From assembly GCF_964204865.1 (NCBI RefSeq), contig NC_135250.1:19096001-19160000 (forward strand): a DNA stretch of 64,000 bases, read 5' to 3'. Shown here piece by piece: positions 2,386 through 23,603 of this stretch; positions within the stretch are counted from its first letter, which is position 1; every line of letters begins with the position of its first letter. Position numbers and translations under genes: made by a program. The notes below the pieces were generated by a model that saw nothing but the letters and a program-made list of their open reading frames with translations, was not told the origin of the DNA and ran no database searches. This DNA comes from Styela clava. Its lineage: Eukaryota.

Positions 2386-4398
2386 ATGGCTGGTGTGAAG
2401 AGAATAATCATTTTTGGAGCTACTGGCCAAACCGGATCAAGGACTCTGCAGAGAGCCATAAATGAAGGTATGCTATAAAATATACTGATTTTATTCGGAA
2501 TACGTCTGTCAAATTATTTCTAAATTGAAATAAAAATGTGATTTGAAAATCCAATTTCCTCCTAATTTAAAATACAGAAAACTTGTTTTGAAAATGGATA
2601 TAAAACATGCTTTTCACCCGAAAAAAATCACTTATATAGAACAAATGGCATTATATATATTGTTATAGTAGGTCATAGTATTAGTAATACCAATTGTGCC
2701 TCAATTTCTCATAATGCTAGATATCCATAGTGATAAAAAAATATTTGTTCAGGTCTACAAGTGTCAGCATATGTACGAACACCTTCGAAGATATCTGAAG
2801 ATGTGAAGAAAAATCTCTACAAAGTTATACAAGGCGATGTTCTCGATAAAAGCTCAGTTGAAAAAGCAATTGAAGGAAATGATGCTGTTATTTCTGCACT
2901 TGGTGCAACTTCTCCTTTTGGTGAGTTTATAATCATGTCCCTAATATTGAGTGGTTTCCCATTTAAAAAACATCTTTGATATATCACACCAACAGAAGCA
3001 AAAAAAATTGCACATGGTTTGAAATTCACAAGCATATTTGTAAACAATGCACTGGTATTTTCAGCGAAAACTACAGTCATGTCAGAAGGTTGCTCAAACA
3101 TCATCTCAGGAATGAAGAAACATAATGTCAGGAAATTGATAGTTGTCAGTGGAGGTACGGAGATTAGTTATCAATTATTAACTACGGTACCTAAATTAAA
3201 ACTGTACCCATGCAAAGCAAATACAAAATTAATCAATGCCCAGGAATTGATATGTGATATGAAAAATTGAAAGATTCTTCAAATTACAGTTTTACAGTAT
3301 GAAATAGAGGTGAAATATAACCTAACAAAATATATACAGGGTGTTCAATGTTCATAAAGTCCTATTACAATTTCAAAATTTGTTATGAAGTCAGTTCAAT
3401 TTATCTCAACAAGGTTTGTTTTAGTTTACTCAGTGTTTATTCAGGTATTTTTTTTAGGTTTTTTCATTTGATACACTCTCTTATGTCCACCATTAGATAG
3501 ACGAAGCACATCGAAGTTCTTTTACCTACTTTAATTTAGGACTTATCAATGAATACCCTGTATATTCAGGATAATAAAAATCGTCAAAGCATTAATCATA
3601 ATCAAAAAAACTGTCAAAAAAAACAAACAATCAATTTATGACCATTTTATTAGCAATATACTTGGCAAGTGAAGCTGGAATATTCGCGACACTGATGAAG
3701 ACACTTGTCAAATCAACAGAAGACCATGTAAAGCAACTAAGTATATTGGAAAATGCATCCAGCAATATAGATTGGATAGCAGTCATGCCACCTTGGATCA
3801 AAGATGACAAAGAAGTCAATCCAAATTACCTGGTAAGCACCAGTACTACACCTCACCTATTCATAGTTAAATTCTGATAAATTGAAACTATGTTTATTGT
3901 TTTGTTCACATTTGAGAATTTGCTCAAAGCACGAATACTTGATAGGAAAAGATTATGTTATTAGGAACAATTTTAATTCATCAAATTCAAATCCAAAGCA
4001 ATTTTCATTGCTCAAAGTAGAGCATTTTTTATAATAGGCCTACAATTTCCAATAGTAATATATCGTTATATAAACAGCAGTTTTGGTGTATTATTTCAAG
4101 CTGGAATTATTTTTTCAGTCCTATTAAAAGTGAAACGATGCAGTAATACAAACAATAATATTTTCATTACCTTTTACAGTACAAAAAAGATTATCTGCCA
4201 GGCGTATCCCAAGTTACTACGGCAGAGATAGCAGATTTTATGATCAAAACATTAATGGATGACGATAAAGTTGAATCACTGAAGCATTCTCAAATTGCAA
4301 TATCGTCAAAACCAAAACAACCGTCAAACTGCCCTGGAACTATAGGAATGGCATTACTTGTTTTGGCAGTCGGTTCAGCCATATATTTCAAATATTGA
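2386..4398 (+). CDS. BLVRB: BLVRB / flavin reductase (NADPH)-like paralog 1, 245 aa, C-terminal transmembrane tail
   Basis: Exons 2386-2467, 2753-2920, 3065-3154, 3654-3832, 4180-4398, all GT-AG and in frame. MAGVKRIIIFGATGQTG Rossmann motif, VRTP, GDVL, DAVISALG, TTVMSEG, EDH, AVMPP, DFM match human BLVRB motifs; ends TIGMALLVLAVGSAIYFKY*. Confidence 0.9.
3337..3560. mobile_element. Tc1/mariner-type MITE
   Basis: Ends CAGGGTGTTCA... and ...TGAATACCCTG flanked by TA on both sides; related sequence at ~13808, ~19025, ~21030 and 23832-24043. Confidence 0.7.
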
Positions 4399-5319
4399 AC
4401 TGCATAAGATTTTGAATGATTATTAAAATAAATGCACAATATTTTTCGAACACATTATTGTTTTTAGATTTATAAAATTAAAATCACATGACTAATCAAA
4501 ATCTACTATCATATTACATCTTACAAAATCAAAATAAGACACAAACAGACAAAACTCATTTCAAGCTCTGCCTGCCCTCTTAATTTGCCTGAGGAAACGC
4601 ACTGCACGAATATTAACACAGTGAAGTGTTTACATCTGTCATGAATTTAGTTCAATAGAGCAGTTACTATTCAATTATTTCTTGTATGACTTGTATTGTT
4701 TTTGATAGATGGTTTAGAACTTAAGAATATTATAGTTTGGTAACTAGATGTAGCAATGTTATATGAGCTTGATTTTATTTGTAAGAATATGTGCCAAAAA
4801 AATAATGTTCTAGTGTGCTTTCTCAATGTGAATTTTGTATTCATTGCAGTAATTGTGTATTTACTGAGCAAAAAATCTGCTATTATCAGGTTCTCGATTT
4901 CTGGACCTAACATATCATAATACATTTGAACATAAAACCAACATGTTATAATTCTGCCAGGTGGGTTGTATTGCCCACTCAAATAATTAAATTTGGCATC
5001 AGTACACTGCAGTTATAGGTCGCAATTGAATATATAAAAAAAAAAAAAAGTTAAAGCAATTGATCCACAGATATTGTTGATCTCAAGATATTTTTGGACT
5101 GTTTTCTTAATAGCAAAATATTTGGTAGGGTACATCCCTGTATGATTGTTTGCTATTACCGTACACTATGCAAGAACTTATGCTTTACCATCAGTAACAT
5201 TTTTAGTTTTAAAATTCAGTTGCTATTTCTGCCAGGTTTTACCATTTCAATGAATATGTTATTAATATGTCATGAATCTGTCATACTCTGTATATACTCT
5301 TTTTACTAATTATAATCAA

Positions 5320-7721
5320 AAGATATGAAAATACCGCAAAAATTTGTATCTATCTTTTATACCACTATTGCCATGTTTTACTTTTATAATCGATAAGACC
5401 GTAAGTGATTATTGAATATTTAAAAGTTGACTAAATAAAATATGTGTTAACGCAATATTTTCGAGTTTTCGATTCGCGTAAATAAATATGTAACATGCGC
5501 AGGATCAACCCAAGCGGAAATCTCATCAATGAGTTAATTGTTAATTAATTGAGTTAATTATGTACAATCTTTTCTCTAAAAAGGGAGCAATGGAAAGCAT
5601 GGAGCGTTTTAGAACGTTTACATGAACTACTAAAATGCAAGCATTGTATTGACAACGAGTGGCATCTCTCTACCATTTGCGCAGGTGACATTTACAGTAG
5701 ATTTATGGCTAGAAATATCTGGAATTATGGGAAAGCATTGTGGTCAAAAGCTTTTTATTTTTCATATTGACATTTTTTATTGACAGAATTTCTAAAATAG
5801 CCATCCAGAATTGACTCAAGGTGGTGGGCTGGAAATCCAGTTCACAGCTAAGGCGCACATTGACCTACGTTTACGTTTGTGTTATGGCCGCCAAAAAGAG
5901 GAAAATATATTTTTAAATTGATTCAACAGCTATTTGCGGAACCATTAGGCAAAAAATATAAGCTATGACGTATGTTTGTGAGTGCGCGATGCTGTAGTAT
6001 GGTCAAAAACATGTTTTTCTACTTTTACATTGTGATGTCACGGACTCGGAGGACTCGATTCGAATCCTTGACCTATTACTCGGATTCGTCGAATCTCTGT
6101 AATGCCGGACTCGTCCCATCCCTATTAAATACAAAACATCATAGTTATCATTGTTTCTAGCTTGGTTCATTATTATTACTATATAATGTCTAATGTCAAA
6201 CGAATCATTGTCTTTGGGGCATCTGGTCAAACAGGATTAAAGATTCTGAAGACAGCATTAGAGGAAGGTAATTAATTATTGAAATATATAAAATAACACT
6301 CATATCACAAAATGTCTTACAACTGCAAACTTGTGTGAAAAAAAATTAGAAGAACTGATGTAGTGGATTTAGAAGTTTGTTCCCAAACTGTTCAATCAAC
6401 TGAATCAAATTGCACCATATCAGGGTTCTCGAACTTTCAAAATCCACGACCCCGTTGCAGGAACTCTTTGACAACTTGCTTTTGTACAAAAATACCCAGT
6501 TTTGCTTTTAACGCGCTTCCTTCAGTTATTTATTCGACACGTTTTTATAATGAGAAGCCAAAATACAAAATTAAAATAATAAATGCATTACAGAGTACAC
6601 TACAGACAGTCAAAACTCTGATCAATAGATAGTCAAATTACTTTGATTGTCATCATGAATTAAATATCTAGTCTTCATAGAACCGCTCTGTGCACCTATG
6701 GGGGCCAAGGATCAAGTTTGGAAATCGCTGTGCTGGACAAAACATACTAAGGTGATATCACTAAATTTTCAAATTTACAGGTCTTGGAGTCACAGCTTAT
6801 GTTCGCACTCCTTCCAAGATATCAGAAAATATCAGAAACAGACTTTATAAAGTAGTGAAAGGAGAAGTGAAGGATAAAGAAATTATTGAGGATGCAATTC
6901 AAGGGCATGATGCTGTATTATCTGCGCTTGGCGGTAAAAAATTTATGTAACATTATGTGAAGCAAAAAGGTTAGGAAATTGGCTTGCATGGAAGGCATGG
7001 ACAACTAGGTGGGAGTGAATAAGAATACCCCCATATTTAAATAGTACAGTATTCTATACTCCTGCTTCACTATCAAATTTGAATTATTTAATAGTATTTG
7101 GCAAAATCACTTCAAAAAAACTTGGTTTGAACCATAAATAAATGAAATACAATTGAAATTTATAATATTACATAATATAGAATTGATATATAATGTCCGA
7201 AATATATTTTCTGTACTTCCATAACTTAAGCATTATTAAATTTCAAATTGATTGTCAATCAAGTCAAAAATAGACCAGATTAACTTATATATATTCAAAG
7301 CAATGACTTTTCCATTTTAACCTTTTTTTACTTAGCAGTTAGCACTACTTTTTTAAACCAGAGGACAATAAAAAATAGATCGGATATCAGATATTGACAA
7401 TATAAAGAAATACACTCTTCAGATGAATTTTATTTTTGCTATTAAATGTATTGTAGGAACTAGCCGCAACATAATTTCAACTGGGATTGCAAATATAATT
7501 GGTGGAATGAAGAAACACAATGTGCGAAATTTGATTGTCGTCAGTGGAGGTTTGTGATACTCTTGCATATTGAAATTAATTACTGAAGTGAACCAGTTTT
7601 TCATAGCAGATACAAATGAAATTTCAATTGGAAAATATACTAATAGACACTGTTGTATTAACTTTTATTTAATAAAATAAGTAAAATTTGTCATATATCG
7701 TCATTTTGATATAAAAGTGAT
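5320..7721 (+). repeat. Segmental duplicate, copy A (upstream region to intron 3 of paralog 2)
   Basis: Near-identical exons, introns and upstream sequence with 8863-10956, interrupted by copy-specific inserts (~5430-6125, ~6450-6745). Confidence 0.9.
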
Positions 7722-8426
7722 TACCGTACTTGATATTACTCAAATGGAAATTTATTTCAAGTCAAAGTAGTAGAAAAACAAACTTTACAGATCTCTTTCA
7801 ACTGACACTATTAAATATTTAAACCAGCAATTCTACTTCCAAGTGAAGCCGGTATCCTATCAACATTGGTGAAAACATTTGTCAAAGCTACAGATGATCA
7901 TATCAAACAAATTGAGATTTTGGAAAATTCTTCTGTAGATATAGATTGGGTTGCAATAATGCCCCCTTGGATTAAGGATAATGATGACGTAAACCCAAAT
8001 TATCAGGTGAGATGTTGATGATGAATTAATTTTCTATTATTCTACAATATATTTATGTGCTCTTTGCTCTGAATAAGCTCCTGCACAGGCAGCCGCGACC
8101 AGATGTATGTTCAGAAAATCTTTCTGGTTTGGCCTTGCCTCCCCAATTAAATAAACCCTGGGTGAGGTGGTTGGTTTGCATGGGAATTGAACGCAAGATT
8201 TTAACCTGCAATGACATGCTTTAACCACTTTTCAACTATCTTTTAACCTTAAACCAGAACTTTAACGTTGTATTTTATTTCACAGTATGCAAAGGATAAA
8301 GTACCTGGGGTATCACGAGTAACAACAGCTGAAATTGCAGACTTCATGATTCATTTGGTAATGAACAAAGCAAAAGCTGAATCCTTTAAACATTGCAAAG
8401 TTGGAATATCCTCAAAATCAAAATGA
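6186..8426 (+). CDS. BLVRB: BLVRB-like paralog 2, 215 aa, no membrane anchor, mosaic gene
   Basis: Exons 6186-6267, 6781-6933, 7457-7549, 7828-8006, 8286-8426; GASGQTG, VRTP, DDH, AIMPPW; ends KVGISSKSK*. Confidence 0.85.
8060..8232 (-). mobile_element. SINE-like repeat fragment (family 2)
   Basis: Shares the core CCACCTCACC(CAGGGTTT) with 58490-58600 (+) and 55730-55807 (-); the 55.8 kb copy has an A-box-like TGGCCTAGTG and a degenerate B box. Confidence 0.45.
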
Positions 8427-8465
8427 TTTCAAGAAGAACTTTTTCAATACATTATCAGTCTAGCA

Positions 8466-8757
8466 CGCCGGTTCCCAGCTACTGGGCCATAGAAACTTTT
8501 TCAGATAGGGCCACAAACCTAATAAAACTGCTACATTTATTGATATATTTAAATAATTGATGGTAGTAACAATGAATGACGATGCTGTCTTTTGCTACAG
8601 GGTGGCATTCTAATTACCGTAATAAAGTGAAAGTGTCCTTTTTGCGGAAAGAATTTTTCAATTTCTTGTAGTTTTCTCCTCGGATGGAAAAGTTAATAGG
8701 CCACATAATTTTTGTGCCTTGAAAATGGGCACAGAAAAAAAAGGTTGAGAATCAATG
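8466..8757. mobile_element. hAT-type MITE just downstream of the paralog 2 stop
   Basis: 8-bp TSD gtctagca/gtctagta and degenerate GGTTCCCA / TGAGAATC TIRs. Confidence 0.55.
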
Positions 8758-8862
8758 GTCTAGTACAAAAACTTTTATTTTCTAATTTGAGTGAATATCA
8801 TTTTTATTTTATTTATACCAGTAATACATTGAACACACATATTATTGAAGTTGAAACCTCAT

Positions 8863-10956
8863 AAGATATGAAAATACCACAAAAATTTGTATCTATCTTT
8901 TATACCACTATTGCCATATTTTACTTTTATAATCAATAAGACCATAAGTGATTATTGAATATTTAAGAGTTGAAACTATCCTTTGTTTTATTTACTGTTT
9001 GCAGAACTAAATAGCCTATTTCCTCAAACCAGATAAATATAGAATATCGTAGTTATCATTGTTTCTAGCTTGGTTCATTATTATTACTTTATAATGTCTG
9101 ATGTCAAACGAATCATTGTCTTTGGGGCAACTGGTCAAACAGGATTAAAGATTCTGAAGATAGCATTAGAGGAAGGTAACTAATTATTGAAATATATAAA
9201 ATAACACTCATATCACAAAATGTGTAAAACTGATGTAGTGGATTTAGAAGTTTGTTCCCAAACTGTTCAATCAACTGAATCAATATGCACCATATCAGTG
9301 GTTCTCGAACTTTCGAAATCCACATGCGGCCCACTAGATACTTCTGTGCGGCCCGCGGGTGATTTGGAAACACGCCACTTCTCGGGTCTAACAATCAAAG
9401 CCGGCATTGTTAAGCAAGCGCGCCGCTAATCCCATCATATTGAAAATCGTGAGATTTATGTTTTGTATTAGTTTCAATAAATATCGGCCTTTGTGTGAAA
9501 TTGGTGTGCCCTTCGCGACCCTTAAAATTCGTCACTCGACCTCTCGCCCCCCAGTTTGGGAAACCCTGATTTAGATATCTCAGTATTCAAACTGAATCAC
9601 GATTAAAACAATATCGGTATACAATCTCACACCCATTAGAGCATATTAGCAACCTATTAATAACGCCACTATTTTTTATTAGCAGTTTATGAAACTGAAG
9701 TTTCTTTTTTGATTCAAATTTAGAACTAAAAAAATAATTACTTCGTTTATGAATGATGCAGAAATTCTCGCACAAAAAAATATTGCTATTCACTGAAAGT
9801 GTTTCGTTAAATTTAACTGTTTCACAATATTATTTTGATTTTTAGTTCATCTTGTGAAATATATATGAGGCAAAGTTTGTCGCCTGCCGGCCTTCAGATT
9901 TATGCTTGTGGCCCTCGTGGTAATTTGAGTTGTGCAGGCCTGTACTAAGGTGACGTGATACCACTAAATTTTCAAATTTACAGGTCTTGAAGTCACAGCT
10001 TTTGTTCGCACTCCTTCCAAGATACCAGAAAATATCAGAAACAGACTTTATAAAGTGGTGAAAGGAGAAGTGAAGGATAAAGAAATCATTGAGGATGCAA
10101 TTCAAGGGCATGATGCTGTATTATCTGCGCTTGGCGGAAAATTAAAAATAGGTAGGTAAAAAATTTAAAAAAAGCATTATGTGAAGCACAAAGATTAAGA
10201 AATTGGCCTGCATGGGAGGCATGGACAACTAGGTGGGAGTGAATAAGAATACCCCCATATTTAAATAGTACAGTATTCTATACTCCTGCTTCACTATTAA
10301 ATTCAAATTATTTAATAGTATTTGGCAAAATCACTTTAAATAAACTAGGTTTGAACCATAAATAAATGAAATACAATTGAAATTTATAATATTACATAAT
10401 ATAGAATTAATATATAATGTCAGAAATATATTTTCTGTACTTCCATAACTTGAGCATTAGTAAATTTCAAATTGATTGTCAATTTGAGTTTTTAAATCAC
10501 CGTTGTCAAAAATAGACCAGATTAACTTATATATATTCAATGCAATGACTTTTCCATTTTAACCTCTTTTTACTTAGCAGTTAGCATTACTTTTTTTAAA
10601 CCAGTGGACAATAAAAAAATAGATTGGATATCAGATATTGACAATATAAAGAAGACACTCTTCAGATGAATGTTTATTTTTGCTATTAAATGTATTGTAG
10701 GAACTAGCGACAAGATAATGTCAACTGGGGTTGCAAATATAATTGGTGGAATGAAGAAACACAACGTGCGAAATTTGATTGTTGTCAGTGGAGGTTTGTG
10801 ATACTCTTGCATATTGAAATTAATTACTGAAGTAAACCAGTATTTCATAGCAGATACAAATGAAATTTCAATTGGAAAATATACTAATAGACACTGTTAT
10901 ATTATCTTTTAATTAATAAAATTTGTCATATATCCTCATTTTGATATAAAAGTGAT
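8863..10956 (+). repeat. Segmental duplicate, copy B (upstream region to intron 3 of paralog 3)
   Basis: Near-identical to 5320-7721; homology ends abruptly at AAAAGTGAT in intron 3. Confidence 0.9.
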
Positions 10957-12087
10957 ATACTAATAGACACTGTTGTATTAATTTTTAATTAGTGAGCGGT
11001 TTGAGTTTATTTGCACATTAAGATAGTCATTAATTGAACCAGTTGAGTAAATTGACTAAACAAATTAAATTATCGAAATTTCATTTTGTCCATATAATGT
11101 AATATTACAAATACCTCTTTGTAATAATAAGTGTCTTTCATATATCTTCTAAGGTTTAGCAATTAAGAAGGTATATTCACAGTAATGTTTTTTTTCTACT
11201 GCAACGATTCACAGCAACAATGTCCAAAGCGAATCGGATATCCAAATACACATACTTTAGCTTGTGAATATTTAAAAATAAATCAAAACAATGTTTTTTC
11301 TCAACTATTCTGATTGTTAATCCAGGATTGCAGTTACCATCCCACGCTATACCCAAATTTTTTTTGAGTTTCTTCGTCGGTGAACTAGCTGATCACTCTG
11401 CAGTGATTAAGCTATTAGAAAACGCATCAGATGACATTGACTGGACAGCAGTGGCTCCTCCTTTTATTAAAGATAGCGATGAAATTGAACCTGATTACAT
11501 GGTAAAATATTGTTCACTAACATAACATGTTGCATCGTTGGAAACATTTTATTTAATTGCTAAATGAAAGAATTTTACAATTTTTTTTAGTATTATTAAT
11601 TACCCTTTGCATTTACTTTTATCTTGTTAATTTTCAGAAGACGTGTGTTTATATTAGTTCTAAATAATTGTAAACCATTAATCTGAATTGAAGCATCCAA
11701 TGACAATGTAATTAAATATTACAAAGCAGACAAAGTCTGTTTATTAGGGACATTGAATATGTAATTTTTTACATTATTTAGAGAAGAAGACAGTCCATAT
11801 ATAAGATCTTATGATCAAGTTGATAAAAAATATTGCCTTCCTAAAAATTTTCTGAAAGAAGTCTTGTTTCACAGGTTGCAATAAATGCTATGCCTGGGGT
11901 TTCCAATGTAACTTCTGCTGAGATTGCTGACTTCATGATCAAAATCATAACAGACAAAAATAAGCAGGAAACATACAAGCATGCGAAAGTTGGAATTTCA
12001 TCTCGAGCTTCAACTAGTTTTAAAGCACCGATTGCTATATTGCTCCTTGCTTTGGCTGCTGGTTCCATCATGTATTACACACAATGA
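9094..12087 (+). CDS. BLVRB: BLVRB-like paralog 3, 243 aa, C-terminal transmembrane tail
   Basis: Exons 9094-9175, 9984-10151, 10701-10793, 11326-11501, 11875-12087; GATGQTG, VRTP, ADH, AVAPPF; ends FKAPIAILLLALAAGSIMYYTQ*; AATAAA at 12131. Confidence 0.9.
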
Positions 12088-13025: not shown

Positions 13026-13110
13026 GCAGACAAAATCAGTGAAGCGTAAACTTTACCACAAAAAGAGAAGTAATATACAGAGAGTAGAGCTGTGTTAGTG
13101 GGCAAGAAAG

Positions 13111-15820
13111 ATGTCTGAAATTAATAGTATCATTGTTTTTGGTCCAACTGGAACTACTGGATTACATATATTGAAAAGGGCAATACTTGAAGGTTAGTAT
13201 TTCATACACAAATTCTTTGCAAAATATTTAATTAAGCCACCTTTGGCTTTGTATGAATATAACTTGTTATATTTATTTAAAAAGCACTGTACATACGGCT
13301 CATAATTTACAATCATTAAGCAAATAACATATTTACATTTTTAATATAATATTTGCTAATGGCATAGTGGTATAGCCTTATGGAAATATGTGGGATTCGT
13401 AGTGTGTGTGCATGTGTCAGAGCTGTGCTCTGAATGCTGGAATGGCAAACAAGTTTACCCAGAGTGCAAGCGTTGTGTCTATATCGTTGTGTCTATATCA
13501 TCTTTTATTATTTCTACAGGATTGGAAGTGACAGTATATGTACGTAATCCAAAAAAAATACCAGAAAGCATATGTGCAAAACTATACAGAATTATACAAG
13601 GAGATGTGTTGGATAAAACGAGGGTTGAGAATGCAATCGAAGGACATGATGCCGTACTGTCTGCACTCGGCCAAGGAGGGAATAACCGTGCGTTAAAAAG
13701 CAGTGTTAAAATAAAGAACAAAAATACCTTGTATTAGAGAAAATAAATTAAATACTGAAGTTGTGCAACTCAATGTACAGTATGTAGATACATATTAAAA
13801 AATATGCACAGATTGTTCATGAAGTCCCGTTACAATTTCAATATGAAATCAGTTCTCAATATATCTTAACCAGATTTGTTCATTTCAATGAGTGATTATT
13901 TAGTTTTTTAATACATTTAATATACCTGTAGGGGCCCAGCAAACTATGGTATCAATAATTCCCCTTTTTTGGGAATTAAAAAAAAAATTTATGAGTTTAC
14001 AAACATCCATGTATTTAAATTGTTTATTTATTTGAGTTGCAAGGCACCGAATATACTGTTATAATTGTGACTAAAAAGGCTATTTTTTGACAATGATAAT
14101 TATGGTTGCCAAATATTGTTTAAAGTACACCATGAAATAAATGGTATGTACACCATTCTATCAAAATAAACGATAGTAGATTATGGCCATTGTACAATAG
14201 AATTTAGGTAATGCAGGATAAATAGGAATCTTAATTGTTAATTACAATGACAATTAATTCCAGGTGACAATAGACTACTGTCGGAAGGTTGTCAAAATAT
14301 TGTGTCGGGAATGAAAAAGCACAATGTAACGAAACTGGTCATTGTTAGCATGGGTAAGCTTTTGTGTATGGTAATCATAAGCTTCAAAGGTACATAGCAT
14401 CACTTGTTCAAAAGCACTAATAGGTATTGATAATCAAAAATGCTCGCACCTATTTATAATTAATTTGCAATTTTTAATAAGAAATGGACAACTTTCTCCT
14501 CATCTTCAAAAATACAGTTTATTCGAAAATATTACAATGGGTACAAAACATTATCCATTCTTATTTTTTTAAACATTACCTCTATTGTCCCAATTCCGTA
14601 AAACTGCATTTGGGCTGATATTCCATGGCTGGGGTCATATAAAAAATCAATGGCTATGGAGCCAGTGGCCAGAACCGATAAAAAAAATGTTGAAACCATT
14701 GTGATTTCAAACCAGTTCCTCAGTCTTGGCCAGTACAATACAATAAACATTGTATAAAAACTGATGATGTCTTTATTAAAGGGACATTTCTTACGAGAGA
14801 AAGACCCAGATTCAACAGGTTTTGGAAAAGGAACGGATTTTATGATGATCATCAAAGACAAATCAAAATACTGGAAGAAGAAAGAGAATCGATTGATTGG
14901 ATCATGATGATGCCTTCGAATATAAAGAACAGTACAAATATCAACCCCGACTATAAGGTGATTGGGTTTTACTTAAAAGCAGGTAACTGTCTCTTACTGG
15001 GCAAGATTAGTACCCACACCGGCAACTCCACTAGGAAAGATAATGATGATCAACGAAAAAAATCCATATATTCTCAGTAGTTTCTCTTGCATTCATACTT
15101 GCTAATATTCTAGCATCTACAGCTCAATTGTCATGTCATATGCAGCAAAATACTGTACAATGTAGGATAAATGTTGGATTTTCAATATTCAAAAATGTTG
15201 ATTCATGAATAAATAACAGTTAACTAGGACATCATTGTCATTTTAACGATGGTTTCAACTTAATGTGATAAAATTTTAATGGTGCAAACGATGGGACATA
15301 CTGCTTAAGACACGATTTTCTTGATAATAGCACTTATTCCGTTATAGTGGAGCCTTCATCAAGCTAGGATGAGAAAGCTTAAATGAAGTTTAGAAAGATC
15401 TATTTTGTTGACAGTTGCCCTTTTTGCAAGCATTTTTAATTTTTGCAGGGGGATAAGATTTTAATTCAAAATTATACACATAATTTTGCTCCCTTTCCCC
15501 ATTTCTTACAAAGTTTTACCTTTTAGGTGGAAAAAAATAATATTCCTGGTGGATATTCCGTTACTGCTGGAGAACTTGCAGATTTCATGGTAAAGGTATT
15601 CATGGATAGAACATCAACGGAATGCTTCAAGCATACCAAGTTAGGGATATCTTCTTATCCAAAGAGGAAATTTTCATGCAAAATCAGTATGTCAGTTGCA
15701 ATGGGTCTATTTGCTTTTGCTATTGGAGCAATGCTGTATTATAGAATGCTACCTGATGTATTGCAAGAATTTGTTGACAATGTCACCAACCATGGCACAG
15801 ATGCTATTAAAGATCAGTAA
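13111..15820 (+). CDS. BLVRB: BLVRB-like paralog 4, 269 aa, transmembrane helix plus C-terminal extension
   Basis: Exons 13111-13192, 13520-13687, 14264-14353, 14782-14957, 15527-15820; GPTGTTG, VRNP, GDVL, DDH, MMMPSN; tail ISMSVAMGLFAFAIGAMLYYRMLPDVLQEFVDNVTNHGTDAIKDQ*. Confidence 0.88.
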
Positions 15821-16698
15821 CTAGTTGAGTCGAATGAAAACTGTGTGTATATAGAATTCTTCACCAAGCCCAAAGTTAAAGCTAATGAGATGAATATGTT
15901 GACAATATGTTAAAATAATTTTCTCTCAGCTCTTATCTTAACCCAAACCATGTTTTTTTTCCTTTTTTACATGACATGGCGATAAGTTGCATAAATATCA
16001 TGTTTTTTTTCCTCGTTATTGCAAAATTATCTTATTGAGTTCAGGATGCATTTTTTCGTCTGAGGTGTATGCATTGTTTTGCCATTTCTTGCAGTTACAA
16101 AGATCCTAAAATTTGAATCACAGGCTTTTTAAAATATGTATAAAACCATATAATGTTTAAATATGGAAAAAAGCATGTGAAAGCGTTCATTTTCTTATAT
16201 TTCCATATATGTCTTAATTTTTTATGCCACTTTCATACACAGTTTCTCACCACAATTTTGAACTTAAATATATTTTGTAAACACACTTCAGCAAACTGTC
16301 AATATTGCAAATTGCAATTGAAAAACCAGTCAATTAATTCAAGTTTATGTCCCTCATTTCACACATTGATTTACTCGTTTTATCTTTCAGGTTTTAGCCA
16401 TAAAATTTACGGAACATGTTCAATTTCCACTATTTTCCTCTGTATATTTTTAAAGGTGTTTGTTGTGTTGTACTTGTAAATATGATTCATGCACCATCAC
16501 AGTAATAAATGTGCTTGAAATCATCCTATTATGGAAGAAGAATTGAAGTGTCATGAAACACAGAGACAGTATAATGAATTAATAAGTGAGAAACAGGAAG
16601 TTTACAAGAATATTAAACCACAGTAAGTAGAAGAGTAAGACAGTGGGCAGTCAGCTTCCAGTAAATATTTATCACTGACGGTTTCTAAAATGTGAATA

Positions 16699-17520
16699 TG
16701 TGCCTTTCTGAAAGACAGTAGCCAAATTCAGAAAGTTGGATGCTCTAGAATTCTGTCCCATGATGTATTTTGTGTCTATAAATTTTATTAGATCAATTAT
16801 ATAAATGGCTCATAAATATAATTGTAATTGAGTTTCCATGAAACAAACTACTTATCCCCATTCTATGATTTGTTGCTGGTGGATTAGTATGCATAAAATA
16901 ACTTTCGACTTCCATTTTTCGTATGTGTGACGAAGTCAAGACTTTTGGCCAGATGCAAATACATTTGTGCTAGAGTGCAGAAAGCCAGAAAGACTCAGAG
17001 AACCCATGTATGCCAAACTATATTAGGTGGGAATTAAAAGAAGCTTTGATTTCACTGTGAAAACTTTATATAAATCTTTGAAGAATATATATCCTTTTCA
17101 AAAATTTTAAATGTAAATAAAACCAAATATGCTACAAATCCCTAGTCGTTTCAGACCTATCTCTGTTTTACTTACAGCGTGACAGTCAACAAAGATTTTA
17201 TTGTGCGACAAATTAATGATCAACTTGCAACAAAGCATTTATCTTCAACTGGAATAGCACAAATACTGTACCACACAGTTTAATAATGAAGAAACTTTTA
17301 AGAAGTCAGAAATGTCAAGATATCAATGTGATATGGATAAAGTCTGAACAGAGCAAATGAAGTGATTATTTCAATTCAGATATAGAAAATTACAGTAATT
17401 GCATCAATTTTCATGCCACATCAAACATTGGTATCATTGAAGATGGACAAGGAATCCCTGCTATAAAGTCACAGGGTCAAAATTCAATATGATTGCCGAT
17501 CAAGCCAAGAATGCAGACGA
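16699..17520 (+). pseudogene. Probable decayed C-type lectin remnants upstream of paralog 5
   Basis: CAFLKDSSQIQKVGCSRILSHDVFC (16699-16773, C-x13-C-x9-C), INDQLATK (~17212), VIWIKSEQSK*SDY...NCINF (~17328-17412) and frameshifted RWTRNPCYK (~17441); disrupted by stops. Confidence 0.3.
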
Positions 17521-17721
17521 AGGGTAACTCTAAACCAAAAAATATTTATAATACAAACGCGTGCCCAGCCAGGTGTAACAGTTTCGCATAATGGTATAGT
17601 ACTTTTATAGTAATTTTATGGAAGGCAACTCAGCTGCTTTTGAGATACCACAACAAAACATTATTGGAAGCTCACAAATGTGATAAGAAATTGTACATGA
17701 CTATAGATTTAAACAAATACA

Positions 17722-19516
17722 ATGTCTGATCAACGCAGTGTTATAATATTTGGTGGTACAGGGCATTCAGGAAAATATATACTGAAGCGAGCTGTGGCTG
17801 AAGGTAGGAGCATAGTAAAATTTTCATGAAGAAAATCACGTACGGTAGATTATTAAACATATCTCTCAATAGATATCCTATTATTAAGAAGATGACCCGA
17901 AAAAGAAACCCATACAATAATATGTTCCAAATGGCCTGCATTTCGTTTTTTGGGTCGCCCCATATTTTATCTAGAGTGGAAAATAATATTTAGGTGTAAA
18001 TGGAATAGTGGCAATATACATGTGTGATACTTTTTGTTTTTCGTTCAGGACACCAAGTAACCGCTTTTGTCAGAACACCCTCAAAAGTGCCAGAGAAGAT
18101 TAAAAAGAATATTCAGATTGTACAAGGAGATGTTTTGAACTCTGAACAAGTGGAAAAAGCAATTAAAGATCAGGATGTAGTTTTGTCAGCACTGGGGAAA
18201 GGACTAAGTCTCGGTAGATAGCATCAGTCAAAATAACTAGCCTATTTCAATCATGCCAAGATATAATATTTATATATGGTACCTCAATCTCACACGTCAC
18301 ACTTATGGTAATCAGGTCATAGACTGTATTTCAACATGGGATTAATTAAGCTGTCTTGTCTCTTTTTTATACCTACCGCAGTTAAATTTAAAAAGCCTAG
18401 ATTATCCACTGTATAATCTATATTCATATTATTAAAGGTCCAACAACGTTAATGTCAGAAGGAGCCAAAAACATAGTGTCTGGTATGAAAAAACATGAAG
18501 TGAAAAATCTCGTCATGATTTGTGGAGGTAACTATGCTATATTTATATAACCGCTTATGATCTATGGCATAAATTCTGAAAAACGTCCACAATCTTAATC
18601 CAAAATATTATGTCATTTATTGCAGCGGGGAGTCTACCAAATCAATCATCACCCTGGCTATTTAGACATATTGGCGAAGACCATAAGAGAGTGGTTGAAA
18701 TTCTTAAACAAGAAAATGAATCGTTAAGATGGGTAACTCTACACCCTCCTTTAATCAGGAGCCTGGGAATCATTAATCCAAATTACCAGGTGTGTTGTTG
18801 TGTTTTCCTTATTAATGCCCAATATACCGGTATTAGGAAGATAACATATAATGAAGTTTATACTTAAAATACAAAAACCGCGATGTGTGCTCATACATAT
18901 ATACTCCAATATTACACAACAGTAAATTACTCAACTTAACTGGTAATATCAGTGTGATTAACTTATTAATAAGTTAAAATGGGCATGGCCTACACCAGGT
19001 TTTGATATGTTTACTTATACATGCTGTTCATAAAGTCCCGTACAATACTAGGTGAAAAAACTTCGATGTCCCCTGTGCATCAAATAGTGGTAAGTGTAAG
19101 TATATAGAAGAAAAAAGGGGGGCTAGTTCACTAAACGCTGTCAAGAACTTTTAGTTAGGGTGGATTACCCATTTTCACATGTCATTATGAACCCCAACCT
19201 GATTACGTCATCCAAAAATTATGATTTGAATAATTTGCGATTCGATTGGTGAATACTTGGACAGCCCTAGAACTAGCATTTCATTAAATATGATTGTTTT
19301 GTCATTTAGTCGATGTAAAACAATCTCTATATATAAAGTTACAAACATTTTTTTTAGATCGAGAAAGATAACAACACAGGAAAATTTTATGTTAATGCTG
19401 GTGAGATTGCAGACTTCATGATGAAATATATCAGTGATGAGGAAACTGTCAAAAAATATCAGAACTGCTTACTAGGAATATCAGCAGGCCCTTCTTCTGT
19501 CTGCTCAATCATATAG
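17722..19516 (+). CDS. BLVRB: BLVRB-like paralog 5, 219 aa, C-terminal CaaX motif (CSII)
   Basis: Exons 17722-17803, 18049-18213, 18438-18527, 18626-18789, 19358-19516; GGTGHSG, VRTP, GDVL, PTTLMSEGAKNIV, EDH, LHPPL; ends GISAGPSSVCSII*. Confidence 0.9.
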
Positions 19517-19940
19517 CTTAAATTATTGAACTATGCCAGTGCTTCAGTGTTCAAGATATAAGTTCAGCATTATTTTTTACAGAAGCCATAACATATTGCA
19601 TTTTATAGTTATATTTATTTATTTGACTACATCAGATTTAAAAAAAAAAATTATTACCTCATTGCTTATCTATCTATTTCCTGCAACATATAAATATTAG
19701 AGTGTGAGCTTACAGTGAAAATCACATTCAATTCACATTATTTATTACAGTATATATGAATTTTATAAGATTTTTTATGAGTTAACAAATTTTGCACTAT
19801 ACAAAGTACTCTAAGTCCTGTCTCTGCATCTAAAATTATGTGTTCTAATATCTATCGTCCACTTTTTCTACTTGCCACTCATGTCACAGTTTTTTAGATT
19901 ACTATTAACCGTACTCGACTGAGAGAACAGTTTTCTATAC

Positions 19941-20238
19941 CAGGGCTACTCAAATATTTCTACCGAAGATCCGCATACAAAAATAAAAATTACTTGTGTC
20001 CGGTGTATCCCGAAATTATATTTCGGCATCCTTAAACACACACTTCCTCGTCAGACTAATGATTATTAACTATTCAAGATTGTTTCTTTTCATATATATT
20101 TAAATCTATAAAAGTGATTTTATAAAAGGAAACTTCAAAAGTGGGGCTAATGATCCAAAATAAAAAATTAGGCGTGGTCCAAATCGAATACCCGAAAGGG
20201 TCGGATTCGGACCGCGGTCCGCCAGTTGAGTAGCCCTG
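19941..20238. mobile_element. hAT-type MITE
   Basis: Perfect 13-bp TIR CAGGGCTACTCAA / TTGAGTAGCCCTG; TSD ttctatac/ttttatac. Confidence 0.85.
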
Positions 20239-20805
20239 TTTTATACTACCTCACTTCAATATTTGTTGATTCCAGTAAAAATGGCAAAAATCTTTCAGCG
20301 AAAACTTGATTACCCAGGTAATTCTGATGAACATCAGATGAATAGTAAACAAAATGTGTATTAAATTTTCACTAATTTCAGATTAGAGGACTACGGATTT
20401 TTTCGAGTACCAAAACTTTTTTGCCACTCGAAGCAATGATAATTATTTTAATTCATTCTTACGCATTCCAAAATACACAAAATATTAACAAAACGTGTCA
20501 GGAAAATTTCGGTCCTCCCAAAAATAATAGCTCCTCACATTATCATTGATATCAGTGACTACTTGTACATGACCTTGCCCGGAGAGAAAGGTGTGTATAA
20601 TCATATATAAATATATATATATACTATTGATTATAATTCATTACTGTTACTACAGTTCCAGGAATTTCATCCATGTCAGCCCCATATTTCCGTTTTCTTG
20701 TATGAATTAACAAAATGATATTTTACATATTGTAATATTTTGTGTTTATATGATACAGGACAAAAAATATTACTATTATACTAACAATTTTACATAGAAA
20801 CTAAT

Positions 20806-23603
20806 ATGCCTAAGCCTAAGATCATAGTTTTTGGAGCAACTGGAAATACTGGATTTTCCATTCTTGAAAGAGGAATTGAAGAAGGTATGAATGCAATATT
20901 TACCAAACATTAGAAATATATTTTTGAACTAACAAATAATGAGAGGGCCTCTATTAAGCATCTATGGATGCCAATATCCAAATACTTTGGGCATTGTAAA
21001 ACGATTTACTGGACTGTCGAATTATATAAGTACAGGATATATATGTTCATATAATTACAATTTTGCTATGAAGTCCGTTCTCAATATTTTCTGACCAGGT
21101 TTGTTTTATATCAATCAGTGTTAATTTAAGTTTTTTACGTCATGTAGGGGGGAACAAAATTATATATGGAATCAATAAATTCAATAAAAAAAACTATAAA
21201 AAATTGTTAACGACTTTTTGAACATTTTGTAATGAAATCATGATATATTTTATTTTTCCAAGGATGTGAGATCACAGCATATGTGAGAACACCATCTAAG
21301 TTGTCAGACCGGTTGCGCAATAATGTCAGAATAATTCAAGGGGACGTTTTGAAAAGAGAACAAGTCGAAGATGCCATTGAAGGGCATGATGTGGTATTGT
21401 CTGCACTTGGTTCGGGATGGGCACTAGGTATGTAGGATACAAAATATTAAACAAACTTTTTTATTTATATGACGCTTATCATGTCTTAATAATAAAATCA
21501 TGAGCTTTCAGCCAGCTTTACTGTTGACCCATTGCACTACCATAATGAAAATGAAAAGCTTTATCAAAAGTTGTAGCACCAGTGAAAAAAATACAATCAG
21601 AATTCTTACATAAACTTTAATCACTCAGCTAGGAAAATTTCATTAATGCATAGTAACGAGTTTAAATTTCAAAAATCTTAGGCACATATCTGAAAGTGTA
21701 TGTAAGGTAATCATTGATGTAATACGTTCACTTGACAATAATTTTTTTTTTTAAGTTTTTGAATCTAGAACTGGCTGTTTTTTTAAATGATTCGATAGCT
21801 ATGATCACAAATACATATTCAATATTTTTCATTTTATAAATAATTATCATGAATAAGAATGATATTTTGGTGATTGTAATAATTCATATATACCGTATAT
21901 ATATATTCAGGTCCTACTAAAATAATGTCGGAAGGATGTAGAAACATTGTCTCAGGAATGAAAAAACATGGCGTTAAGAAGATCGCAGTAGTGGGAGTAG
22001 GTGAGACGAAGAACTTTATCCCAGTACATTAATAATTATTTCCATTAGGATTTCCAAATCATATAATGATTGATCCATGACCTCTAAACCAGTTAATGTC
22101 CCGGTCTAAATCGGTGTAGTTGGCGACTTGATAACAGAGACGTGGAGTAGTTGAACAAGTTTAATATGGTAGTAAGACTCCAATAATTTCATTATTGTAT
22201 CCTTTCTACACACATTCTTTACAATATAGTATAAGTTACATAGATTTATGTAAATATGCTAATACCAATTTTAAATACCAAAATGCATGGCTGTCCTAAA
22301 CCCATGAGTTGTGTTATTAATTAAGTGTCTTTAGTGTTACCAAAAGAAACGAGAATTTTCAAACCAAGATTTTCTGAAAATCTTCTTCCTGAAATTGTCA
22401 TAAAATCAAATAAGAATGTAGAAAAAAACATTACCGGTAGTTATAAAATTTATTCTATGACAATTGCAACAACAATAAACTGTTTTTTTAGATAACATAA
22501 CCATACCCAGTCTTCTTTCTCGTAGATTCTCATTTGATTTTATGACAATATCCTTTATTTACACAACATAACCATAACATAATCTGAAATAGAGATGAAG
22601 TGCCCCATTTCATCATGCCACATAAAGAAGATATTCCTACCCTAATGGAAAACACATTCTAAATGTTGGTGATTTTTATTCAGCAAGTCTAATACCAGGA
22701 GAATGGAGCCCTATGGTACTGAAATATTTGATTGAAGATCATCAGAAGCAGATTGATATTCTTAATGAAGAAAAGGACACAATTGACTGGGTTGCCATAA
22801 TGCCTCCTTCACTTTGGAGAAGCAATTATATCAGTCCATCATACACGGTCAGTATAGTTCATTAAGAACTCGTTGACGATAAACTTGAACCATTTGAAAA
22901 ATTAAAAGTATAACCACTTGAAACTAAATTTGAGAACTAATCAAGATAATCTCAATATTTCTTCCTCAAATCAAACCTACTTTTACCCCACAACTCCCAC
23001 AAGAAAATCATGTCACTTTTTTATGATTTTAGGTGTCAATGTCAACACAAACATTGCTTTTGTAGCTTTTCTAACTGATAAAAAAAGATCTACTTTATTT
23101 TTGTGATAGACATTTAGACCAGGGGTGGGCAAATTAGGGCCCGCATGCCGGATCCAGTCAGATCGCACCTCGGGTGAAGTGGTGGGCATAAGGTTATTCA
23201 ATACTTCAACCTGTGACACATATTGAAAAATATTTACTAATAAAATGATGTTTTAACTTTAATAAACAAATGTCTGAAAGCTTCGACTAGAGTTAACATC
23301 AAGAATATCCATTCACATTCCCAGTTACATAAACTCATTTGTCTCTAGATCATAATAAGTTATTTTACATTCAAACAGGTTGAAAAAGATACATTCACTG
23401 GTCGCTACTACGTATCAACAGGAGAGGTTGCGGACTTTATGTTCAAATGTATAAAAGATGACAACATTTGCCAAGAATACAAGCATCGTCTAGTGGGAAT
23501 CTCATCTGGGCCAGCAATTATTTCAACTAAGAACCTGGTTCTGTTGACAATTCTTTCAGCAGCAGCCATCGGATCTTATTTCATGGGATATACACCTTGG
23601 TAA
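20806..23603 (+). CDS. BLVRB: BLVRB-like paralog 6, 240 aa, C-terminal transmembrane tail
   Basis: Exons 20806-20884, 21263-21427, 21911-22000, 22684-22847, 23379-23603; GATGNTG, VRTP, GDVL, PTKIMSEG, EDH, AIMPPS; ends KNLVLLTILSAAAIGSYFMGYTPW*. Confidence 0.9.

What the first reader, a model, noticed from the sequence alone, without database searches (positions are those of the whole stretch)
2386..23603. Six-gene BLVRB/flavin reductase array with interchangeable membrane anchors
Seen: six intact paralogs share one 5-exon layout, and their last exons diverge right after a shared (G/A)IS(S/A) motif. Paralogs 1, 3, 4 and 6 continue into a ~17-20 aa hydrophobic helix, paralog 5 ends in CSII, and paralog 2 stops with no anchor. 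None has a signal peptide. Established: human BLVRB is a single-copy soluble NADPH reductase of biliverdin IX-beta, flavins and some quinones; heme oxygenase and cytochrome b5 are tail-anchored. Inference: a family of cytosol-facing NADPH reductases sorted to different membranes, possibly reducing lipophilic pigments, quinones or metals. I know of no description of membrane-anchored BLVRB families, but could not search.
Basis: partly seen in the sequence, partly recalled or inferred. Interest (0 to 1): 0.88.

Follow-up and report, generated by a model that had tools for sequence, protein, structure and literature searches.

The report
Tail-anchored BLVRB-like reductase gene array
The sea squirt Styela clava carries a tandem row of seven intact genes for biliverdin-reductase-B-like NADPH enzymes, and four of them end in a membrane-spanning tail and one in a lipid-attachment motif, although this enzyme family is otherwise known only as soluble.

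Summary
Window 2386-23603 holds six intact, head-to-tail, five-exon genes with canonical GT..AG introns in conserved phases. A seventh paralog (g0) lies just upstream, and its last exon ends at window 69. The genome is Styela clava. RefSeq already names six of the seven "flavin reductase (NADPH)-like", with proteins that match my models. Spliced RNA contigs from three studies reproduce all eight introns of g5 and g6 and run through the tail-coding last exons.

The fold is BLVRB: human BLVRB is the best solved match (TM 0.92, rmsd 1.7 Å). NADPH-binding residues are kept, but the substrate residues Ser111 and His153 are not.

After the last β-strand (GISS), g1, g3, g4 and g6 have a 9-residue linker, a basic residue and a 17-20-residue hydrophobic helix. 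g5 ends in CSII; g0 and g2 have no tail.

Relatives in other ascidians show the same three endings: transmembrane tails, CMIS/CVVA, or none. None of 116 bacterial-type homologs has a tail.

The most likely reading is a tunicate family of cytosol-facing, membrane-anchored NADPH reductases. Sorting to different membranes and the substrates remain untested. I found no paper describing this.

The parts
1..69 (+). End of exon 5 of a seventh paralog, g0. Its exons 1-4 and the start of exon 5 lie upstream, at L002 7882-10000 = G000:C1:19093882-19096000. The protein has 214 aa, ends ...KHCKMIIHH with stop at 67-69, and has no tail.
   Evidence: one residue different from RefSeq protein P0020
2386..4398 (+). 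g1: exons 2386-2467, 2753-2920, 3065-3154, 3654-3832, 4180-4398. 245 aa, transmembrane tail.
   Evidence: one residue different from P0019, 'flavin reductase (NADPH)-like [Styela clava]'
4336..4389 (+). g1 tail helix (aa 226-243, GRAVY 1.94), followed by KY and the stop.
6186..8426 (+). g2: exons 6186-6267, 6781-6933, 7457-7549, 7828-8006, 8286-8426. 215 aa, ends GISSKSK, no tail. Exons 1-3 are 92-97% identical to g3. It lacks 15 bp (5 codons) at the end of exon 2 relative to g3 (153 vs 168 nt).
   Evidence: identical to P0018
9094..12087 (+). g3: exons 9094-9175, 9984-10151, 10701-10793, 11326-11501, 11875-12087. 243 aa, transmembrane tail.
   Evidence: identical to P0001
12031..12081 (+). 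g3 tail helix (aa 226-242, GRAVY 1.96).
13111..15820 (+). g4: exons 13111-13192, 13520-13687, 14264-14353, 14782-14957, 15527-15820. 269 aa, transmembrane tail plus 25 further residues.
   Evidence: No database protein or RNA evidence was obtained for this copy. Its exon-5 type is conserved in P0003, P0005 and P0006.
15683..15817 (+). g4 tail helix (15683-15742, aa 225-244, GRAVY 1.71), then an acidic post-TMD segment (15743-15817) carrying the motif LPxVLQEFxD, which is shared with P0003, P0005 and P0006.
17722..19516 (+). g5: exons 17722-17803, 18049-18213, 18438-18527, 18626-18789, 19358-19516. 219 aa, ends in CSII.
   Evidence: all 4 introns seen as GT..AG joints in RNA contigs; RefSeq P0160 is a one-codon indel allele with the same ending
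19502..19513 (+). g5 C-terminal CSII, a candidate CaaX prenylation box.
   Evidence: It is kept in RNA contigs of three runs; the only variant there, at 19507, is a third-base change in a run-X1 contig.
20806..23603 (+). g6: exons 20806-20884, 21263-21427, 21911-22000, 22684-22847, 23379-23603. 240 aa, transmembrane tail.
   Evidence: all 4 introns are joints in 4 of 4 RNA runs, and contigs read through the tail and the stop; identical to P0156; AF2 pLDDT 95
23535..23594 (+). g6 tail helix (aa 219-238, GRAVY 1.60). AF2 predicts a helix at 216-237.

Best explanation
This is a tunicate-specific expansion of the BLVRB (flavin reductase NADPH) family: seven tandem genes in Styela clava. The catalytic Rossmann domain keeps its NADPH site. 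Directly after its last β-strand (GISS), four copies carry a 9-residue linker, a basic residue and a single 17-20-residue hydrophobic helix at the extreme C-terminus.

With no signal peptide, such proteins are inserted post-translationally as tail-anchored proteins, with the enzyme on the cytosolic face of a membrane. The low tail charge makes the ER (possibly ER plus mitochondrial outer membrane) the most likely target. One copy (g5) has replaced the helix with CSII, which probably accepts a prenyl group and gives a weaker, also cytosol-facing attachment. Two copies (g0, g2) are soluble.

Shown here: gene structures, transcription and splicing of g5 and g6, the fold, cofactor residues, and conservation of the tail architecture across species. 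Inferred: membrane insertion, topology, prenylation, the target organelle, and enzymatic activity on membrane-associated or lipophilic acceptors. The paralogs have different residues at the substrate positions, so they probably differ in substrate more than in location.
For: Gene models and intron phases.

RefSeq proteins match the models.

Spliced RNA contigs from 3 studies give all 8 introns of g5 and g6 and read through the tail exons.

Family assignment:
- Full-length PF13460 match, 111-115 bits.
- phmmer against PDB: human BLVRB at 1.7e-19, next best 8e-11.
- Foldseek on an AF2 model of pLDDT 95: human BLVRB at TMt 0.92, rmsd 1.7 Å, 33% identity, against <=0.80 for bacterial structures.
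- The nearest ESM Atlas clusters are chordate 'Biliverdin reductase B'.

G10, G13, G16, R35, D54, H132 and P151-P152 are conserved.

Tail architecture was examined in 21 TM-bearing sequences. Nearly all have a linker of 8-15 residues, a net basic flank just before the helix (20 of 21), a TMD of 15-23 residues and a short C-terminal segment. The TMD sequence drifts while hydrophobicity is kept among the g6-type orthologs P0002, P0157 and P0158. The g4-type post-TMD motif is conserved in three other sequences.

None of 116 bacterial-type homologs has a C-terminal hydrophobic segment.

The chance rate of a TM-like read-through is 0.3%.

CaaX-like endings recur in the Clavelina protein P0009 (CMIS) and in P0014 (CVVA).

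TM tails occur in both major subclades of the tunicate tree, and the C-terminal state changes at least 5 times.
Against: - No localisation, fractionation or prenylation data exist.
- TMD hydrophobicity is only moderate (GRAVY 1.6-1.96), close to the Kyte-Doolittle threshold.
- RNA evidence was obtained only for g5 and g6. g4 has neither a database protein nor RNA support here.
- The catalytic Ser111 and the substrate-binding His153 of human BLVRB are not conserved (Gly/Met/Val and Trp/Phe/Asn/Leu/Ser), so BLVRB-type chemistry is not assured.
- CSII has Ser at a1 and Ile at X, which is not a textbook farnesyl or geranylgeranyl box, and no g5 ortholog from another species was found.
- Homology of the TMDs between the two tunicate subclades (linker 8-12 against 12-15 residues) is not demonstrated, so 'ancestral tail' rests on parsimony only.
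Confidence: 0.68

Rival explanations
1. The anchors are real, but they do not send the paralogs to different membranes. All four TM tails use the same default destination (ER). The array diversified through its substrate pocket and expression, not through location.
For: C-terminal segment charges are +1, 0, -3 and 0, with TMD GRAVY 1.6-1.96 and an identical 9-residue linker. In mammalian cells a low tail charge favours the ER, whereas peroxisomes and mitochondria need charged tails (PMC5450235). The pocket columns differ in every paralog.
Against: g4 has a conserved, acidic 25-residue lumenal segment that the others lack, which could be a retention or interaction signal. Targeting rules come from mammals and yeast, not tunicates. 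CSII and the tail-less copies clearly differ in attachment.
Confidence: 0.45
2. The hydrophobic C-termini are not membrane anchors. They would be tolerated extensions, for example oligomerisation helices or degradation signals, on otherwise soluble enzymes.
For: Hydrophobicity is moderate, rich in Ala, Gly and Ser. Two copies do without a tail. No experimental data exist.
Against: The architecture (net basic flank in 20 of 21, an uncharged helix of 15-23 residues, the extreme C-terminus) is kept across the 21 TM-bearing sequences examined while the sequence changes. It is absent from all 116 bacterial-type homologs. A random extension gives such a tail in 0.3% of cases. When the tail is replaced, it is replaced by a lipidation motif in two lineages. 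That is what selection for membrane attachment predicts.
Confidence: 0.12
3. CSII of g5 is a chance ending left after loss of the TM tail. g5 would be an ordinary soluble enzyme.
For: X = Ile and a1 = Ser are not canonical. No ortholog with a conserved box was found. No relic of the TMD remains downstream, so the history is unclear.
Against: Among the six non-TM endings in the family, three have Cys at -4 with an aliphatic a2 (CSII, CMIS, CVVA). This is far above the roughly 0.5% I estimate per sequence from typical residue frequencies (my assumption, not a tool result). The box is identical in two assemblies and in the RNA contigs.
Confidence: 0.4
4. The family is not the ortholog of vertebrate BLVRB. 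It would descend from a bacterial-type 'NADH-flavin reductase' acquired or retained separately, and the BLVRB likeness would be family-level only.
For: Outside tunicates, the best hits in the 5.8-billion-protein search are prokaryotic or metagenomic (up to 110 bits, 35-37% identity). This is higher than the 74 bits to human BLVRB. The C-terminal '...ADFMIK...VGIS' resembles the bacterial ending '...ADVADFMIK...VGISN'.
Against: That database is overwhelmingly prokaryotic and pre-filtered by shared words. Among solved structures, human BLVRB is clearly closer than any bacterial member, by sequence and by fold. The Atlas neighbours are chordate BLVRB clusters. All copies have four spliceosomal introns. 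No other PF13460 gene exists in the genome that could be the 'true' BLVRB.
Confidence: 0.12

Closest known systems
Human BLVRB / flavin reductase (NADPH) (PDB 1HDO and others)
   Same: Same fold and size of catalytic domain (TMt 0.92, rmsd 1.7 Å, 33% identity). Same GxxGxxG, Arg35, Asp54, His132 and Pro151-Pro152.
   Different: The human enzyme is single-copy, soluble and 206 aa long. Here there are seven tandem copies, four with a C-terminal TMD and one with CSII. Ser111 and His153 are replaced.
Bacterial 'putative NADH-flavin reductase' / SDR family oxidoreductases of PF13460
   Same: Length of about 205-210 aa, 30-37% identity, and the same end of domain (VGIS).
   Different: None of 116 has a hydrophobic C-terminal extension. 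They have no introns.
Tail-anchored redox partners of the ER and outer mitochondrial membrane (cytochrome b5, heme oxygenase-1) and the tail-anchored Rossmann enzyme FAR1 (my own knowledge)
   Same: No signal peptide, a single TMD at the extreme C-terminus, and a catalytic domain facing the cytosol.
   Different: The catalytic domains are unrelated. Insertion and topology are experimentally shown for those proteins and only inferred here.
NADH-cytochrome b5 reductase (CYB5R3) and FSP1/AIFM2 (my own knowledge)
   Same: Cytosol-facing NAD(P)H oxidoreductases that exist in lipid- or membrane-anchored and soluble forms and reduce membrane-bound acceptors.
   Different: They are anchored at the N-terminus (myristoyl with or without a hydrophobic segment) and are flavoproteins with a different fold. 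Their forms arise from alternative transcripts, not from paralogs.
Ascidian relatives found here: Clavelina lepadiformis CAK8688179.1 (P0009), Phallusia mammillata CAB3225808.1 (P0013), and unnamed transcripts P0002, P0015, P0144-P0147, P0157-P0159
   Same: Same domain, the same GISS end, and the same three kinds of ending: TMD, CaaX-like, or none.
   Different: They come from other species. Linker length and TMD sequences differ, and the taxa of the unnamed ones are unknown.

Membership tests
BLVRB / flavin reductase (NADPH), Pfam PF13460 | NAD(P)H-binding Rossmann domain matching PF13460 over its full length | tested here: met
   g6 scores 110.9 bits and g5 114.6 bits over profile positions 1-183 of 184. 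Exon 2 of g1 passes the cut-off on its own (43.3 bits), and the genome scan found the exon-2 region of all seven copies above the cut-off.
BLVRB / flavin reductase (NADPH), Pfam PF13460 | GxxGxxG plus Arg35 (2'-phosphate of NADPH) and the other cofactor contacts | tested here: met
   G10, G13, G16, R35, H132 and P151 are kept in all six Styela copies in alignment A2 (g0-g3, g5, g6), with E for D54 in g2 and g3 and Y for P152 in g0. g4 was not in that table; its GxxGxxG, Arg35, GDV and DH motifs are visible in the paralog alignment.
BLVRB / flavin reductase (NADPH), Pfam PF13460 | Closest solved structure is BLVRB | tested here: met
   phmmer 1.7e-19. Foldseek TMt 0.92, rmsd 1.7 Å.
BLVRB / flavin reductase (NADPH), Pfam PF13460 | Catalytic Ser111 and substrate-binding His153 of the human enzyme (their roles are from my own knowledge) | tested here: not met
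   The Ser111 column is G in g0-g3 and g5 and V in g6; g4 has M there, read from its exon-3/4 boundary. Ser sits one position earlier in g0-g4. The His153 column is F, W, W, F, L, S in g0, g1, g2, g3, g5, g6 and N in g4.
BLVRB / flavin reductase (NADPH), Pfam PF13460 | NADPH-dependent reduction of flavins or biliverdin IXβ | not testable with these tools
   Needs recombinant enzyme assays.
Tail-anchored membrane proteins | No N-terminal signal peptide or other TMD | tested here: met
   The N-terminus is the first Rossmann strand. In g3, g4 and g6 the best internal 19-residue hydropathy is below 1.6; in g1 it is 1.66, and that segment is core β-strand plus helix of the fold.
Tail-anchored membrane proteins | Single hydrophobic helix within about 30-40 residues of the C-terminus | tested here: met
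   g1 226-243 of 245, g3 226-242 of 243, g4 225-244 of 269, g6 219-238 of 240. AF2 predicts a helix at 216-237 in g6.
Tail-anchored membrane proteins | Post-translational insertion with the N-terminal domain in the cytosol | not testable with these tools
   Only the charge distribution (basic before the helix, neutral or acidic after it) fits this.
CaaX-prenylated proteins (g5 only) | Cys at position -4 from the C-terminus | tested here: met
   CSII followed by the stop at 19514-19516.
CaaX-prenylated proteins (g5 only) | Aliphatic a1 and a2, and an X residue accepted by FTase or GGTase-I | tested here: inconclusive
   a1 = Ser, a2 = Ile, X = Ile. No predictor was available. The relatives' endings CMIS and CVVA are canonical.
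CaaX-prenylated proteins (g5 only) | Conservation of the box in orthologs | tested here: inconclusive
   No g5 ortholog was found in other species. The box is conserved within the species: two assemblies and RNA contigs.

The most novel reading that the evidence does not exclude
The ancestral tunicate BLVRB became a tail-anchored enzyme. Since then the family has repeatedly swapped its attachment (transmembrane helix, prenyl group, none) while rewriting its substrate pocket. That would make a set of cytosol-facing NADPH reductases working on membrane-bound or lipophilic acceptors (quinones, tetrapyrroles, or the metal and polyphenol chemistry of ascidian blood cells). It would be a membrane-redox system with no counterpart in vertebrates.
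Probability: 0.3. Interest if true: 0.7.

Novelty: new variant of a known kind. Interest (0 to 1): 0.5.

Why it matters
BLVRB is studied as a soluble cytosolic enzyme involved in heme catabolism, flavin and quinone reduction, and redox control in blood-cell development. A lineage in which the same fold is anchored to membranes in several ways would show that the enzyme can work at a membrane surface. It would also point to lipophilic or membrane-bound acceptors.

The family offers a natural series (TMD, CaaX, none; seven pockets) for asking how anchor type and substrate pocket co-evolve.

For tunicate biology, it supplies candidate reductases for the unusual redox chemistry of ascidian blood cells.

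The value is limited for now. The genes are already annotated generically, nothing is known of their activity or location, and the phenomenon may be confined to tunicates.

Tried and rejected
I rebuilt the models from coordinates only.
- The joined spliced models were never sent to a search tool. Searches used exon references or database proteins returned by those searches that turned out to match the models (P0001, P0018-P0020, P0156, P0160). Joined models were used only inside scripts, for translation, hydropathy, alignment, and the g4 row of the trees.
- An apparent frameshift in g4 exon 4, suggested by the ORF list, was rejected. The exon is open in one frame, 14782-14957.
- I looked for relics of a lost TMD downstream of the g5 and g2 stops. 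There is none for g5. For g2 there is only weak, gapped similarity to g1 after a TGA where g1 has CAA. This is suggestive and not conclusive.
- Rfam on window 1-26000 gave no match.
- The BLVRA catalytic domain (PF09166) was not detected in the genome, but the control rang nowhere, so this shows nothing. Heme oxygenase is present on contig C9.
Synteny in other species and the taxa of the unnamed homologs could therefore not be examined.
- Vertebrate and invertebrate BLVRB sequences could not be brought into the tree, so orthology and the transfer rival stay open.
- Eight literature searches found no paper on anchored BLVRB-family proteins or on this family in ascidians (and a term search inside the Styela clava genome paper PMC7540406). 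The library covers open-access papers only.

Full report
**What is there**

The window is AT-rich (about 32% G+C). A scan for the Rossmann motif finds six exon-1 candidates on the + strand, at 2416, 6216, 9124, 13141, 17752 and 20833. I read every junction and assembled the exons by coordinate. This gives six genes of five exons each. All 24 introns are GT..AG, the intron phases are 1,1,1,0 at homologous codons, and the reading frames are open: 245, 215, 243, 269, 219 and 240 aa. tblastn of the six proteins against the window recovers exactly these 30 exons and no fragments. An apparent frameshift in g4 exon 4 was an artefact of the ORF listing.

**A seventh member**

A PF13460 scan of the whole assembly (377 Mb; the window is C1:19096001-19160000) finds seven exon-2 matches. 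All are in this cluster, and one lies 1.9 kb before the window. I fetched the upstream 20 kb. It shows a seventh five-exon gene, g0, with the same intron phases. Its last exon crosses into the window and stops at 67-69. Its protein has 214 aa, ends ...KHCKMIIHH and has no tail. No further copy lies within 20 kb upstream or anywhere else in the window.

**Identity of the genome and of the models**

A profile of the six exon-5 translations (alignment A1) was searched against 1.8 billion representative proteins. It returned a protein identical to my g3 model (P0001). Searches from that protein and from relatives name the organism. P0001, P0018, P0019, P0020, P0156 and P0160 are "flavin reductase (NADPH)-like [Styela clava]".

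These proteins compare with my models as follows:
- g2, g3 and g6 are identical.
- g0 and g1 differ by one residue.
- g5 differs by a one-codon indel, which is also seen as a polymorphism in RNA.

g4 has no database counterpart that I could retrieve.

**Transcription**

Nine public runs hold about 16-25% of the sampled words of the g5-g6 stretch. That share is what exons alone would give. I laid the contigs of four runs from three studies on 17680-23679. They show GT..AG joints at exactly the eight predicted introns. All four runs show them for g6. For g5, runs X1 and X4 show all four and X3 shows two (X2 has no g5 contigs). The contigs continue through exon 5 beyond the stops, to 19953 for g5 and 23679 for g6. 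No joint to another last exon appears. The tools allowed one such call, so g0-g4 were not tested this way.

**Family**

- Full-length PF13460 matches of 111 and 115 bits.
- phmmer against PDB puts human BLVRB first at 1.7e-19, with the next family at 8e-11.
- An AlphaFold2 model of g6, built on a 37-sequence alignment (A2), has mean pLDDT 95.2.
- The best Foldseek matches of that model are the human BLVRB entries (TM 0.91-0.92 on the target, rmsd 1.7-1.9 Å, 33% identity), well ahead of bacterial members at 0.80 or less.
- The nearest ESM Atlas clusters are two chordate "Biliverdin reductase B" clusters whose representatives are 207 aa long, so they have no tail.

The cofactor positions G10, G13, G16, R35, D54, H132 and P151-P152 are conserved. 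The Ser111 column is G in g0-g3 and g5, M in g4 and V in g6, with Ser one position earlier in g0-g4. The His153 column is F, W, W, F, N, L, S in g0 to g6 (the g4 residues come). NADPH binding is therefore expected. BLVRB-type substrate handling is not assured, and the pocket differs from copy to copy.

**The tails**

The domain ends with the β-strand (L/V)G-I-S (AF2 strand 204-208 in g6). In g1, g3, g4 and g6 there follows:
- a 9-residue linker ending in or near a basic residue;
- an uncharged stretch of 18, 17, 20 and 20 residues (GRAVY 1.94, 1.96, 1.71, 1.60) that starts exactly 52 codons into exon 5 in all four;
- a C-terminal segment of 2, 1, 25 and 2 residues, with net charge +1, 0, -3 and 0.

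AF2 makes this a helix (216-237 in g6, pLDDT 78-88). The four tails share a pattern at the end of the helix: A-x-G-(S/A)-x-x-Y-(Y/F). g5 ends GISAGPSSVCSII, g2 ends GISSKSK and g0 ends KMIIHH.

**Are the tails more than chance?**

1. Translating from every non-exon position of the first 24 kb gives a TM-like continuation in 50 of 15,475 cases, or 0.3%.
2. None of 116 bacterial-type homologs retrieved has a C-terminal hydrophobic segment. They stop at ...VGISN or similar.
3. Relatives from other species keep the architecture while the sequence changes. The g6-type transcripts P0002, P0157, P0158 and P0159 all end in a TMD of different sequence. The g4-type exon-5 ORFs P0003, P0005 and P0006 keep the TMD and also the post-TMD motif LP-x-V-(L/V)-Q-(E/Q)-(F/Y)-x-D-E. 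A second clade (P0015, P0144-P0147) has a 12-15-residue linker, a TMD and a +1 to +2 tail. In the 21 TM-bearing sequences the linker is 8-15 residues and the TMD is 15-23 residues, and 20 of the 21 have a net basic flank just before the helix.
4. Where the tail is absent, two lineages have a lipidation-type ending instead. These are g5 (CSII) and, in aplousobranch-type sequences, Clavelina lepadiformis CAK8688179.1 (CMIS) and the fragment P0014 (CVVA). Phallusia mammillata CAB3225808.1 ends GISSS.

So three of the six non-TM endings have Cys at -4 with an aliphatic a2. Both kinds of anchor place a protein on the cytosolic face of a membrane, so the two observations support each other.

**History**

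Maximum-likelihood trees were built with the tails and with the tails cut off. Both give a well-supported tunicate clade against a bacterial outgroup, with two subclades:
- Clavelina plus Phallusia plus P0015/P0144-P0147;
- the Styela-type genes: (g0, g1, (g2, g3)), g4, and (g5 + P0159, g6-type).

TM tails occur in both subclades. At least five changes of C-terminal state are needed. The simplest reading is an anchored ancestor with losses in g0, g2 and Phallusia and replacements in g5 and Clavelina. This rests on parsimony and on unproven homology of the TMDs between the subclades.

g2 is a mosaic. Its exons 1-3 and intron 2 are 92-97% identical to g3, whereas its exons 4-5 are only 54-65% identical to g3 and are closest to g1. 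This points to recent conversion or duplication of the 5' half. The g2 stop (TGA) lies where g1 has CAA, and only weak, gapped similarity follows it. No relic of a TMD follows the g5 stop. The anchors are therefore alternative outcomes of turnover within one exon. They are not shuffled modules.

**Where would the tails go?**

Costello et al. 2017 (PMC5450235) show for mammalian cells that low tail charge together with a hydrophobic TMD favours the ER. Charged tails shift proteins to mitochondria and peroxisomes, and removing the tail gives ER targeting. All four Styela tails have low or negative charge and moderate hydrophobicity. They look like one class (ER, perhaps with some mitochondrial outer membrane), not like four addresses. 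The +2 tails of the second clade look more mitochondrial. This is inference from rules established in other organisms.

**Origin**

Outside tunicates, the best hits in the 5.8-billion-protein search are prokaryotic "putative NADH-flavin reductases" (up to 110 bits). That exceeds the 74 bits to human BLVRB. The database is mostly prokaryotic, and the structural and Atlas comparisons favour BLVRB. I therefore treat a separate, transfer-type origin as a minor rival. I could not test it, because no invertebrate or vertebrate BLVRB sequences or gene structures were reachable.

**Context**

The genome has a heme oxygenase gene on another contig. The test for BLVRA was uninformative. The array's neighbours in the window are unrelated: an acyltransferase ORF at 28532-29650 on the minus strand and a protein-kinase exon at 42030-42317.

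**What is known**

The genes carry generic RefSeq names. Seven full-text searches and a term search inside the Styela clava genome paper found nothing on membrane-anchored or prenylated BLVRB-family proteins, or on this family in ascidians. The library is open-access only, so this is absence of evidence.

**Verdict**

The anchor interpretation is well supported by comparative evidence but has no experimental support. The claims about different membranes and about substrates are not supported.

I class it as a new variant of a known kind: a known enzyme fold combined with known anchor types, in a combination and a family-wide pattern that I could not find described. Interest is moderate.

- The joined spliced models were not sent to any search tool.
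- RNA evidence covers g5 and g6 only.

Noticed in passing
window 20084-20238: An interspersed repeat of about 155 bp lies between g5 and g6. The first look found 1,324 candidate copies in the genome, and the 40 that were scored are 89-95% identical. RNA-contig depth is very high (about 750-1,900), with many different flanks, so it is transcribed inside many transcripts. It contains a GC-rich hairpin and has no Rfam match. The Styela clava genome paper reports an absence of SINEs, so its class would be worth checking.
   Followed up: partly
window 19370 (g5 exon 5): An in-frame 3-bp deletion polymorphism (NN against N) appears in one RNA run, and the RefSeq g5 protein P0160 shows the same difference. 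Several other allelic differences occur in g5 between runs.
   Followed up: partly
window 6933 against 10151 (end of exon 2 of g2 and g3): g2 exon 2 is 15 bp (5 codons) shorter than g3 exon 2 (153 vs 168 nt): g2 lacks the stretch that encodes GKLKI in the loop after SALG but keeps a GT donor. Its exons 1-3 are otherwise 92-97% identical to g3.
   Followed up: partly
window 28532-29650, minus strand: A single-exon ORF of 373 aa has Acyltransferase (PF01553) and Acyltransferase C-terminus (PF16076) domains, making it a lysophospholipid-acyltransferase-like gene.
   Followed up: partly
window 42030-42317, plus strand: An exon encoding part of a protein kinase domain (PF07714/PF00069, HRDLK motif), belonging to a multi-exon gene downstream of the array.
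   Followed up: no
g1 aa 223 and g4 aa 222 (window about 4327 and 15674): Cysteines lie just before the tail helix in g1 (three residues before) and g4 (two residues before). Juxtamembrane cysteines are typical palmitoylation positions (my own knowledge).
   Followed up: no
window 18981-19219 (intron 4 of g5): Low-depth RNA contigs in two runs lie inside the intron without joints. They could be unspliced RNA, an antisense transcript or a repeat.
   Followed up: no
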